DNA of 63,606 nt, the filler included, from Octopus bimaculoides (Eukaryota): assembly GCF_001194135.2 (NCBI RefSeq). It is 6 parts of 6 records of this genome, joined end to end, with 100 filler letters (N's around TTAATTAATTAA, not from the genome) between each part and the next. Parts side by side here need not be neighbours in the genome. Positions count along the whole stretch, not along the records: positions 24,894 to 45,072 come from NC_069005.1; 5 more parts are not named here. The stretch is one strand, 5' to 3'. The position numbers and the translations under genes were made by a program. Within the stretch, counting starts at the first letter, position 1. The number at the start of each line of letters is the position of its first letter. Below the pieces are notes generated by a model. It searched no databases. It saw only the letters and a program-made list of their open reading frames with translations, and had not been told where the DNA came from. Below are positions 35,443 through 36,708 of the stretch, piece after piece.

Positions 35443-36708
35443 GTAGATCGGACAGTTTCCACGGCAACAGAAAATAGCGTCGGCGAATTGGTCGATGAAG
35501 GGGCCGTGACTGTGACATTGAAAGTCGATTACAGAGCGGAAGACGAGTTTAAGCAGGACTCCAAATGTGAAATGCAAGTGAAGAATTTGGGTAAGCAGGA
35601 ACCTGGTTCTGATTCTGGGCATGACTCAGTCTCTTCCTCAAGTGTCCTTGAAAATCCGACTGGTGATTCGGGGTCAGCTCATAGCGATGCGGAATCCGTG
35701 TCCCGTCCATCAACCGGGGCCCCAATCCAGGAGTCAGCAATGCTTTTAGCCGCGCCTTCTCCAACATTGCCAGTCACCAAGCGGAAACCTCCGTCATTAT
35801 CGCAACTAGTTTCGATCGATAAGAAAACTCCGTCACCTGTGACCTCATCAACTTTGACATCAAGGTCAAGTCCATGTCCTTCGTCGTTCTCGTTGAATTC
35901 TCCTGCGACTCCGTCAACCACGTCGCCGCCATCAATGCCTTTATCAATGTCTTCTTCGTTGATATCTCCATCATCTCACCCGTCACACGAAACAACCGAA
36001 AGCTCGGCATCATCGCATACAATGTCCTCTTGCTTTCCTGCATTCTTGCCATCTTCTGACACAGCAGCTAAAGGCGAACCACCGGAACAAGCTTCTTCAC
36101 TCGGACACCAACCGACACCGCCAACCACTTCCTCTGCTCTGTCTGACGTCACACGCGCTTCATCAATCGATCAACGTCGCTCTTTCGATTATCAACTGAC
36201 TCATGCTTTGAAGGTGATTGCTTCTGACTCCAACACAAATTCAACTCTACGAAGCGATGATGGAACACCTATAGCGACCGACGAGTCGCCGAAACCGCAG
36301 AAACAACAACTTCAACAATTCACTTCGTCGCTTCGCTCCAATACTCCACTCGTTGTGCCTGCTTTTAACTCGACCCAGCAATCGGAGAAAGCGCCATCTT
36401 CGCCAAAAACAACCAATCAACGTTTCAGAACCAATAATATCTTGTCGCGCATGCTCTTACCAACTTTCAATGTTTCCTCTTCGGCGTTTTTCTCTTCGTC
36501 TGCTTCTTCTTCTCCGGGATCACCTTCATCTATCTCTCCCTCTTCACTCTACCCGCCTCCTTCTTCACTCGCCTCTGAAATTCCATTATCTCCGTTGCCT
36601 ACAGCACCTCCACCAACACCGCCACCACCAACAACACCACCACCGCCGCCGCCGACTTCCTTGTTGACTTCCCCGACCTCAACGCCTCCATCGTCGTCTC
36701 CACCTTAG
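35443..36708 (+). CDS. Ser/Pro/Thr-rich ORF (>=421 codons; 5' end in the N-gap), ending at an in-frame TAG
   Basis: Open from the gap end to TAG 36706-36708, with strong NCN codon periodicity. A strong acceptor (long poly-Y ...ttccag|) at 34974 lies just before the gap. No recognised domain. Confidence 0.55.
   Translation, partial: VDRTVSTATENSVGELVDEGAVTVTLKVDYRAEDEFKQDSKCEMQVKNLGKQEPGSDSGHDSVSSSSVLENPTGDSGSAHSDAESVSRPSTGAPIQESAMLLAAPSPTLPVTKRKPPSLSQLVSIDKKTPSPVTSSTLTSRSSPCPSSFSLNSPATPSTTSPPSMPLSMSSSLISPSSHPSHETTESSASSHTMSSCFPAFLPSSDTAAKGEPPEQASSLGHQPTPPTTSSALSDVTRASSIDQRRSFDYQLTHALKVIASDSNTNSTLRSDDGTPIATDESPKPQKQQLQQFTSSLRSNTPLVVPAFNSTQQSEKAPSSPKTTNQRFRTNNILSRMLLPTFNVSSSAFFSSSASSSPGSPSSISPSSLYPPPSSLASEIPLSPLPTAPPPTPPPPTTPPPPPPTSLLTSPTSTPPSSSPP

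What the first reader, a model, noticed from the sequence alone, without database searches (positions are those of the whole stretch)
36706..36708. Single in-frame TAG splits a ~1560-codon reading frame: candidate A-to-I stop-to-Trp recoding or readthrough switch
Seen: one frame is open from 35443 to the donor at 40131 (4689 nt) except for CCA CCT TAG CCT CAG. Both sides look selected for coding, with NCN periodicity upstream and stop-avoiding repeat phases downstream. Established: UAG is the preferred ADAR neighbour context (5' U, 3' G); UIG reads as Trp (HDV amber/W site, Fusarium PUK1 stop-codon editing); coleoids recode extensively by A-to-I editing; a +4 C favours leaky termination. Inference: editing or readthrough could switch between a short Ser/Pro-rich product (or a long uORF ahead of the strong-Kozak ATG at 36790) and a giant fused membrane or secreted precursor. 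Mundane alternatives are a consensus error or rare allele (for example TCG to TAG), or use of TTAG/CAG as splice acceptors.
Basis: partly seen in the sequence, partly recalled or inferred. Interest (0 to 1): 0.75.

Follow-up and report, generated by a model that had tools for sequence, protein, structure and literature searches.

The report
Conserved in-frame stop between two octopus ORFs
The TAG is real and identical in four octopus genome assemblies, where it ends a conserved 425-residue Ser/Pro-rich protein lying 81 bases upstream of, and in frame with, a second large gene; whether it is ever bypassed by editing or readthrough cannot be decided from sequence alone.

Summary
In this Octopus bimaculoides piece, one frame is open from 35443 to 40263 apart from TAG at 36706-36708. 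The other five frames carry 47-123 stops. The "start" at 35443 is only the edge of a 402-N assembly gap.

The TAG is not an error or rare allele. O. vulgaris, O. sinensis and a third octopus contig all have TAG, an 81-nt indel-free spacer, then ATG.

- **ORF1:** about 425 aa, "FLO11-like". It starts in the gap after an AUG-free leader and is under purifying selection (omega 0.17-0.27).
- **ORF2:** it begins at the conserved strong-Kozak ATG 36790 (1637 aa in the O. bimaculoides model). It also evolves as coding: omega 0.56, all indels in threes, no stops gained.
- **Annotation:** all three public annotations treat these as two genes.

The simplest reading is therefore a genuine stop between two adjacent cistrons. 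Being in frame with a stop-free spacer happens by chance about 11% of the time.

I found no editing helix. Hints of a translated spacer are suggestive only: no indels, 5 synonymous versus 6 non-synonymous changes, and a 61-nt invariant block around the TAG. Readthrough, editing or in-frame splicing remain open, and RNA data would settle it.

The parts
34975..35038 (+). Start of the exon that carries ORF1. A conserved polypyrimidine tract and AG acceptor (34973-34974) are followed by the 5' leader, which continues into the N gap.
   Evidence: The acceptor and first bases are conserved in O. vulgaris and the Logan octopus contig. In both, the 394-nt leader up to the ORF1 ATG has no ATG, has stops in all frames, and has indels that are not multiples of three. 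An O. vulgaris gene model splices into this acceptor.
35039..35440 (.). Assembly gap (402 N) that hides the rest of the leader and the ORF1 start codon (expected about 35428).
   Evidence: N-run listing. Orthologues start MASSCLDRTV, 18 nt before the codon matching 35446.
35443..36705 (+). Visible part of ORF1. It encodes a Ser/Pro/Thr-rich, probably disordered protein: 425 aa in O. vulgaris and O. sinensis, annotated as 378 aa from M35572 in O. bimaculoides.
   Evidence: P0001, P0002, P0003 and P0005 all end ...PTSTPPSSSPP. Omega is 0.17-0.27 with P < 1e-6. No Pfam or PDB match.
36706..36708 (+). TAG, the conserved stop codon of ORF1 and the subject of the finding.
   Evidence: Identical in O. 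bimaculoides, O. vulgaris, O. sinensis and the Logan contig. It lies in a 61-nt block (36673-36733) that is invariant in three species.
36709..36789 (+). 81-nt spacer, in frame with both ORFs, stop-free in that frame and without any ATG.
   Evidence: No indel in any of four assemblies, whereas the neighbouring intron has 22.9 indels per kb. In the ORF frame there are 5 synonymous and 6 non-synonymous changes (P = 0.10), against 3/8 and 0/11 in the other frames.
36790..40131 (+). First coding exon of ORF2 (1114 codons), starting at a conserved strong-Kozak ATG. It is low-complexity and rich in Ser, Thr, Asn and Pro. The full product is 1637 aa in O. bimaculoides and 1690 aa in O. vulgaris.
   Evidence: Annotated starts and product lengths. 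Omega is 0.56 with P = 3e-5. All 36 O. bimaculoides-O. vulgaris indels across ORF1 to ORF2 preserve the frame, and 270 substitutions created no stop (simulated P = 1e-4). The only homologue in 1.84 billion cluster representatives is an octopus protein.
38107..38193 (+). Strongly hydrophobic 29-residue segment (ORF2 residues 440-468), a candidate transmembrane helix.
   Evidence: Kyte-Doolittle 19-residue mean of 3.23. Present with variable length in O. vulgaris.
40018..40083 (+). Signal-peptide-like or signal-anchor-like segment KYLFFMLLVVVQLLSQPVDSAQ, just before the splice donor.
   Evidence: Translation and hydropathy. Conserved in O. vulgaris.
40132..40137 (+). Splice donor GTAAGT that ends the large exon.
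   Evidence: Best donor score in the region. Conserved in the other genomes. Downstream sequence evolves like an intron.

Best explanation
The TAG at 36706-36708 is the genuine, evolutionarily conserved termination codon of an upstream cistron, ORF1. ORF1 encodes a roughly 425-residue Ser/Pro/Thr-rich, probably disordered protein, translated from the first AUG after an AUG-free leader. A second cistron, ORF2, starts 81 nt downstream at the conserved strong-Kozak ATG 36790. ORF2 encodes a 1637-residue, largely low-complexity protein with hydrophobic membrane or signal-like segments, and it continues through the donor at 40131 into exons outside this piece. On this view the shared frame and stop-free spacer are coincidental. 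Shown here: the TAG is conserved, both ORFs evolve as coding, each has its own start codon, and three annotations keep them separate. Inferred: ORF2 is translated from its own ATG, most plausibly from an mRNA isoform that lacks ORF1 (an internal start site, or an upstream exon spliced to the TAG/CAG acceptor-like site) rather than by scanning through ORF1.
For: All four assemblies have TAG, an 81-nt spacer, then ATG. Every orthologous ORF1 protein ends at ...SSSPP. ORF1 has omega 0.17-0.27, and its 394-nt leader has no ATG in two species. The ORF2 start ggaacaATGg is conserved. The O. bimaculoides, O. vulgaris and O. sinensis RefSeq annotations each give two genes 81 nt apart. The chance of a shared frame with an open spacer is about 0.11, which is not extreme. 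No dsRNA helix or conserved structure was found at the TAG.
Against: ORF1 carries about 15 ATGs, so ribosomes cannot reach ORF2 by leaky scanning. ORF2 therefore needs a separate mRNA, an IRES or reinitiation, and none of these is shown. The spacer has no indel in any species, although the adjacent intron predicts about 1.9 for the O. bimaculoides-O. sinensis pair alone. Its substitutions lean synonymous only in the ORF frame (P = 0.10). A 61-nt invariant block surrounds the TAG. Automatic gene callers split at any in-frame stop, so two annotated genes is weak evidence.
Confidence: 0.55

Rival explanations
1. Programmed translational readthrough. Most ribosomes stop at UAG and make the 425-residue protein. 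A regulated fraction decodes UAG and makes an ORF1-spacer-ORF2 fusion, as in Drosophila kelch, headcase and synapsin.
For: ORF2 is in frame and the spacer is stop-free in four species. The spacer has no indels against 22.9 per kb in the intron. There are 5 synonymous and 6 non-synonymous changes in frame, against 3/8 and 0/11 in the other frames. The base after the stop is C, and a 61-nt invariant block surrounds the stop. ORF2 otherwise has no obvious route to translation on an ORF1-containing mRNA.
Against: The sequence after the stop is CCUCAG, which is not the CARYYA type of readthrough motif. No conserved downstream structure is supported: there are only 4-5 bp hairpins and no covariation. 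The conserved strong-Kozak ATG 27 codons after the stop is unnecessary under this model. All the statistical hints are weak (P about 0.1 each).
Confidence: 0.2
2. A-to-I editing of UAG to UIG (read as Trp) by ADAR fuses the two ORFs in a fraction of transcripts. This is the stop-loss type of recoding already catalogued in coleoids.
For: UAG is the preferred ADAR triplet (established knowledge). Coleoid editome studies explicitly join adjacent ORFs separated by an edited UAG (PMC8382921). The nucleotide-level invariance around the site fits the constraint seen around coleoid recoding sites.
Against: No helix was found. The 600-nt fold has z = -0.18. The pairing probability of the A is only 0.5-0.7, in a 4-bp hairpin. 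The best duplex partner of the conserved block anywhere in 34975-45072 (-55.6 kcal/mol) lies within the range of shuffled controls (-44 to -61). No protein with a residue at this position exists in the searched collection, but that collection holds very few octopus transcript-derived sequences.
Confidence: 0.1
3. In-frame alternative splicing removes the TAG. An internal donor in ORF1 (the best candidate is aag|GTGATT at 36214) would join the acceptor-like ttAG|CC (36708/9) or tcAG|TT (36714/5). That would fuse the first ~260 residues of ORF1 to ORF2.
For: 36214 is the best donor-like GT inside ORF1. It gives 495- or 501-nt introns, both multiples of three. It lies in a 38-nt invariant run, and the acceptor-like TAG follows a pyrimidine-rich tract inside the 61-nt invariant run.
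Against: The segment 36214-36705 evolves as coding, with omega about 0.33 and only in-frame indels, so it cannot be a constitutive intron. The donor score is modest (4.6 against 6.6 bits for the real donor). One candidate in three is in frame by chance. The pyrimidine richness is explained by Ser/Pro/Thr codons.
Confidence: 0.07
4. Assembly or consensus error, a rare nonsense allele, or a recent pseudogene.
For: The O. bimaculoides assembly has gaps nearby.
Against: TAG is identical in four independent assemblies from at least three species. Both ORFs remain under purifying selection.
Confidence: 0.01

Closest known systems
Drosophila stoned locus (stnA/stnB) and similar animal dicistronic genes (from my own knowledge, not checked here)
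   Same: Two long conserved ORFs on one strand are separated by a very short spacer, 81 nt here. The upstream one is translated from the first AUG.
   Different: A shared mature mRNA is not shown here. ORF1 is not depleted of AUGs (about 15), so leaky scanning is not available. The two ORFs are in the same frame with an open spacer.
Drosophila kelch, headcase and synapsin stop-codon readthrough, and phylogenetically predicted readthrough genes (from my own knowledge)
   Same: A single conserved in-frame stop separates a conserved ORF from a long downstream open frame. The base after the stop is C.
   Different: No protein or ribosome evidence exists here. The downstream ORF has its own conserved strong-Kozak ATG 27 codons after the stop. 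No readthrough motif or structure was found.
Coleoid stop-loss A-to-I editing (UAG to UGG joining adjacent ORFs; Shoshan et al. 2021, PMC8382921), HDV amber/W and Fusarium PUK1
   Same: A UAG triplet sits between two in-frame ORFs in a coleoid.
   Different: No RNA-DNA difference is available and no editing-complementary helix is detectable.
Nested or shared-5'-exon loci such as the cholinergic locus VAChT/ChAT (from my own knowledge)
   Same: An upstream intronless ORF precedes a downstream gene's exon. Acceptor-like sites occur before each: 34974/5 and 36708/9.
   Different: Use of the second acceptor, and of a common 5' exon, is purely inferred.

Membership tests
ADAR stop-loss recoding site | Edited adenosine in a favourable triplet (5' U, 3' G) | tested here: met
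   U-A-G at 36706-36708.
ADAR stop-loss recoding site | The site is embedded in an extended double-stranded RNA helix (editing-complementary sequence) | tested here: not met
   Fold z = -0.18. Only a 4-bp hairpin forms, and the duplex scan of 34975-45072 is no better than shuffled controls. Partners further away in the pre-mRNA could not be searched.
ADAR stop-loss recoding site | A in genomic DNA but A/G in RNA from the same source | not testable with these tools
   No read data are available. No protein in the searched collection crosses the stop.
Programmed stop-codon readthrough | A conserved stop followed by an in-frame region that stays open across species | tested here: met
   TAG, an 81-nt stop-free and indel-free spacer, and an open ORF2 in four assemblies.
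Programmed stop-codon readthrough | Protein-coding substitution pattern immediately after the stop, before any alternative start | tested here: inconclusive
   Spacer has 5 synonymous and 6 non-synonymous changes (P = 0.10). Pairwise omega is 0.29-0.64 on 6-8 changes.
Programmed stop-codon readthrough | A known stimulatory context or downstream structure | tested here: not met
   The +4 C is present, but CCUCAG is not CARYYA, and no supported structure was found.
Programmed stop-codon readthrough | A fusion protein or ribosome footprints across the stop | not testable with these tools
   Needs Ribo-seq, mass spectrometry or western blot.
Dicistronic or adjacent-cistron locus | Two independently conserved ORFs, each with its own start codon in good context | tested here: met
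   ORF1 starts at aaaagATGg after an AUG-free leader, and ORF2 at ggaacaATGg. Both have omega below 1.
Dicistronic or adjacent-cistron locus | Both ORFs on a single mature mRNA | not testable with these tools
   The Logan contig L002 spans both ORFs, but it is collinear with genomic flanks, so it may be DNA.
Dicistronic or adjacent-cistron locus | Upstream ORF depleted of AUGs, allowing leaky scanning to ORF2 | tested here: not met
   14-15 ATGs upstream of the ORF2 ATG in each species, against 15.5 expected.
Sequencing error or rare allele | A sense codon in other assemblies or species | tested here: not met
   TAG in all four assemblies.

The most novel reading that the evidence does not exclude
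The UAG is a conserved, regulated bypass point. Readthrough, A-to-I editing or in-frame splicing would let octopus cells choose between a 425-residue Ser/Pro-rich protein and a roughly 2,090-residue fusion that carries it onto a membrane or secreted precursor. That would explain why the 81-nt spacer has stayed in frame, stop-free and indel-free, and why the sequence around the stop is invariant.
Probability: 0.3. Interest if true: 0.65.

Novelty: new member of a known kind. Interest (0 to 1): 0.4.

Why it matters
If the stop is simply a stop, this is an ordinary pair of fast-evolving, octopus-restricted low-complexity genes. Its value is then as a caution: an assembly gap created the apparent start of the frame. 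The unusually tight, in-frame spacing still raises the question of how ORF2 is translated. If the stop is bypassed, it would be a clean, conserved case in a cephalopod of one codon switching between a short protein and a giant fusion. Existing octopus RNA-seq and Iso-Seq data could test this within hours.

Tried and rejected
- **Whole-frame homology search.** Searching the full 1563-aa conceptual protein found nothing. The 8000-candidate limit was probably filled by low-complexity words. A search with ORF2 residues 1-180 also returned nothing.
- **Domain and structure matches.** Pfam and PDB sequence searches gave only compositional or His-tag-like matches. Rfam found nothing in the piece.
- **Exact look-up of the genomic ORF 36790-40263.** Not on record.
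- **Downstream exons of ORF2.** No convincing exon appears in 14.7 kb of O. sinensis sequence or in window 40132-45072. The last 523 residues therefore remain unseen, and no Pfam hit is on record for the full products.
- **Nature of Logan run SRR11869394 (RNA or DNA).** Could not be established.
- **Editing helix.** Local folds, a duplex scan and an alignment fold were all negative.
- **Leaky scanning.** Rejected because of the ATG count in ORF1.
- **Constitutive intron containing the TAG.** Rejected because 36214-36705 evolves as coding.

Full report
**Observation**

The piece reads CCA CCT TAG CCT CAG at 36700-36714. Between 35441 and 40263 the frame of 35443 has two stops: this TAG and the closing stop at 40261-40263. 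The other five frames have 47-123 stops, and about 69 are expected from composition. Codon position 2 is 52.7% C upstream of the TAG. The ATG at 36790 is in ggaacaATGg, and the exon ends at atg|GTAAGT at 40131/2. So the description is accurate.

One correction matters. The frame "opens" at 35443 only because bases 35039-35440 are an assembly gap of 402 N.

**Origin of the window and its relatives**

A search with the non-repetitive part of the upstream frame found three proteins:
- an O. vulgaris protein of 425 aa (92% identical);
- the window's own annotated protein of 378 aa;
- a 447-aa ORF from a Logan assembly of run SRR11869394 (87% identical).

Cluster members name the source as Octopus bimaculoides and add the O. 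sinensis RefSeq protein XP_029654201.1, "flocculation protein FLO11-like". The window lies on GCA_001194135.2 CM046625.1. Every one of these proteins ends ...PTSTPPSSSPP, at the same stop.

DNA from O. vulgaris (L001), O. sinensis (L003) and the Logan contig (L002) shows the same TAG, an 81-nt spacer with no indel, and the same ATG. This removes the consensus-error and rare-allele explanations.

**Anatomy of the upstream cistron (ORF1)**

In O. vulgaris and the Logan contig, ORF1 starts at aaaagATGg (MASSCLDRTV...). In the window this ATG falls inside the gap.

Upstream of it lies a 394-nt leader. It begins at a conserved polypyrimidine tract and AG acceptor (window 34973-34974). The leader has stops in every frame, indels of 1, 2, 2, 12, 13 and 14 nt, and no ATG in either species. 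That is what a real 5' leader looks like, so ORF1's AUG is the first one a scanning ribosome meets on this exon.

An O. vulgaris gene model (106 aa) splices into this acceptor and stops within the leader. A 2-nt indel breaks its frame in O. bimaculoides. It probably marks 5' UTR exons rather than a conserved protein.

ORF1 is under clear purifying selection (Nei-Gojobori):

| Comparison | omega | Fisher P |
|---|---|---|
| O. bimaculoides vs O. vulgaris | 0.27 | 6e-7 |
| O. bimaculoides vs Logan contig | 0.17 | 6e-20 |

It has no Pfam or PDB relative. The "FLO11-like" and "RPB1-like" names reflect composition only.

**Anatomy of the downstream cistron (ORF2)**

All three annotations start a second gene exactly at the ATG corresponding to 36790:
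- 1637 aa in O. bimaculoides;
- 1690 aa in O. vulgaris;
- a truncated 578-aa model in O. sinensis.

The first exon supplies 1114 aa in O. bimaculoides and 1167 aa in O. vulgaris. The remaining 523 aa in both come from exons outside the piece. I could not find them in the flanks available, and no Pfam hit is on record for the full products.

The exon is low-complexity: Ser 12%, Thr 10%, Asn 8%, Pro 7%. It contains a strongly hydrophobic 29-residue segment (38107-38193) and a signal-peptide-like segment (40018-40083) just before the donor.

The exon is coding:
- Omega is 0.56 (P = 3e-5).
- 270 substitutions between O. bimaculoides and O. vulgaris created no stop (simulated P = 1e-4).
- All 36 indels across ORF1 to ORF2 preserve the frame.
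- In the adjacent intron only 13 of 108 indels are multiples of three.

A full scan of 1.84 billion cluster representatives found only the O. sinensis protein. The exon therefore appears restricted to octopuses or is evolving too fast to trace.

**Is the in-frame arrangement meaningful?**

Taken alone, not strongly. About 32% of local 81-nt stretches are stop-free in a given frame, and one frame in three matches, so the chance is about 0.11.

Three further observations lean towards a constrained, perhaps translated, spacer:
- **No indels.** The spacer has no indel in four assemblies. The intron rate of 22.9 per kb predicts about 1.9 for the O. bimaculoides-O. sinensis pair alone. The ORF1 leader rate, about 15 per kb between O. 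vulgaris and the Logan contig, predicts about 1.2 for that pair.
- **Substitution pattern.** The 11 substitutions on the three-species tree split 5 synonymous to 6 non-synonymous in the ORF frame (P = 0.10). The other two frames give 3/8 and 0/11.
- **Invariant blocks.** The TAG lies in a 61-nt block invariant in three species (36673-36733). A 66-nt block follows at 36814-36879, and a run that long has shuffle P of about 0.02. Synonymous divergence is lowest in the window spanning the stop (dS 0.04 against 0.08-0.24 elsewhere).

Each of these is weak, and each can also be explained by untranslated regulatory constraint.

**Tests of the editing idea**

- A 600-nt fold centred on the site is no more stable than shuffles (z = -0.18).
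- In windows of +/-100 to +/-700 nt, the A has pairing probability 0.5-0.7, but only within a 4-bp hairpin.
- The best intermolecular duplex between the conserved block and any 150-nt window of 34975-45072 is -55.6 kcal/mol. That lies inside the range for shuffled blocks, -44 to -61.
- The three-species alignment fold shows no compensatory change.

Stop-loss editing that joins adjacent ORFs is a recognised category in coleoid editome work (PMC8382921). If it occurred here, it would be a new member of a known kind.

**How ORF2 could be translated**

ORF1 contains 14-15 ATGs in each species, against 15.5 expected. Leaky scanning is therefore excluded. On an mRNA that carries ORF1, ORF2 would need readthrough, editing, reinitiation after 425 codons, or internal entry.

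Alternatively ORF2 has its own mRNA. The TAG and the following CAG sit behind a pyrimidine-rich tract and could serve as 3' splice sites for an upstream exon.

An in-frame internal donor candidate exists at 36214 (aag|GTGATT; the intron would be 495 or 501 nt). But 36214-36705 evolves as coding (omega about 0.33), so any such splicing would have to be alternative. None of this can be decided without transcript data. The Logan contig spans both ORFs but is collinear with genomic flanking repeats, so it may be DNA.

**Verdict**

The most economical explanation (0.55) is that the TAG is the real stop of a conserved upstream cistron, and that ORF2 starts at its own conserved ATG. The rivals are:
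- programmed readthrough, 0.2;
- A-to-I editing, 0.1;
- in-frame alternative splicing, 0.07;
- error or rare allele, refuted, 0.01.

The finding is a legitimate but unproven recoding candidate. It is cheap to test with existing octopus RNA-seq and Iso-Seq data (sets listed in PMC10700109).

Noticed in passing
window 35039-35440 and 34703-34753: The 402-N gap hides the ORF1 start. An older O. bimaculoides RefSeq model (XP_014768490.1, 437 aa, 'RPB1-like') bridges the gap by splicing a 17-residue exon (MVIGVSHGIVVVLDERL) to 'tag|ATCGG' at the gap edge. This looks like an artefact of the gap.
   Followed up: partly
L003 (O. sinensis), about 3.3 kb into the ORF1-ORF2 alignment, in an ACT repeat: A 25-nt deletion relative to O. 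vulgaris shifts the ORF2 frame in the O. sinensis assembly, which is otherwise 99.7% identical. It probably explains why RefSeq XP_036354541.1 is only 578 aa with odd internal 'introns'. It could be an assembly error or a real allele.
   Followed up: partly
L001 9607-9763 (= window 34975 onwards): O. vulgaris annotates a 106-aa protein whose last exon uses the conserved acceptor and stops 240 nt before the ORF1 ATG. A 2-nt indel breaks the frame in O. bimaculoides. It is likely 5' UTR exons miscalled as a gene, which would put three 'genes' on one transcription unit.
   Followed up: partly
window 36856-36861 and 40146-40151: ATTAAA lies 150 nt after the TAG, inside the 66-nt invariant block, and is followed by CA and a GTTTTT run. 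It could be a poly(A) signal for a short ORF1 mRNA. AATAAA lies 15 nt after the 40131 donor and could be an intronic poly(A) site. No AATAAA occurs inside the 4.7-kb open frame.
   Followed up: no
window 39940-40131: An in-frame ATG at 39940 (weak context) precedes MLTLNRLSN...KYLFFMLLVVVQLLSQPVDSAQ. On its own this looks like an ordinary signal-peptide first exon. A shorter secreted isoform starting here is conceivable.
   Followed up: no
window 39212-39270 versus 39747-39804: GAT/GTG repeats and ACC/ATC repeats within the ORF2 exon are 58 nt long and 76% complementary, about 480 nt apart. They are a possible double-stranded RNA, and so a possible editing substrate, elsewhere in the exon.
   Followed up: no
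window 37348-37399, 38500-38572, 39212-39240 and others: Coding trinucleotide repeats (poly-Asn, poly-His, poly-Asp, poly-Thr, poly-Pro) differ in length between O. bimaculoides and O. vulgaris, always in frame.
   Followed up: partly
L003 20191-20517, minus strand: A reverse-transcriptase-like ORF fragment (retrotransposon remnant) lies in the intron downstream of the large exon in O. sinensis.
   Followed up: no
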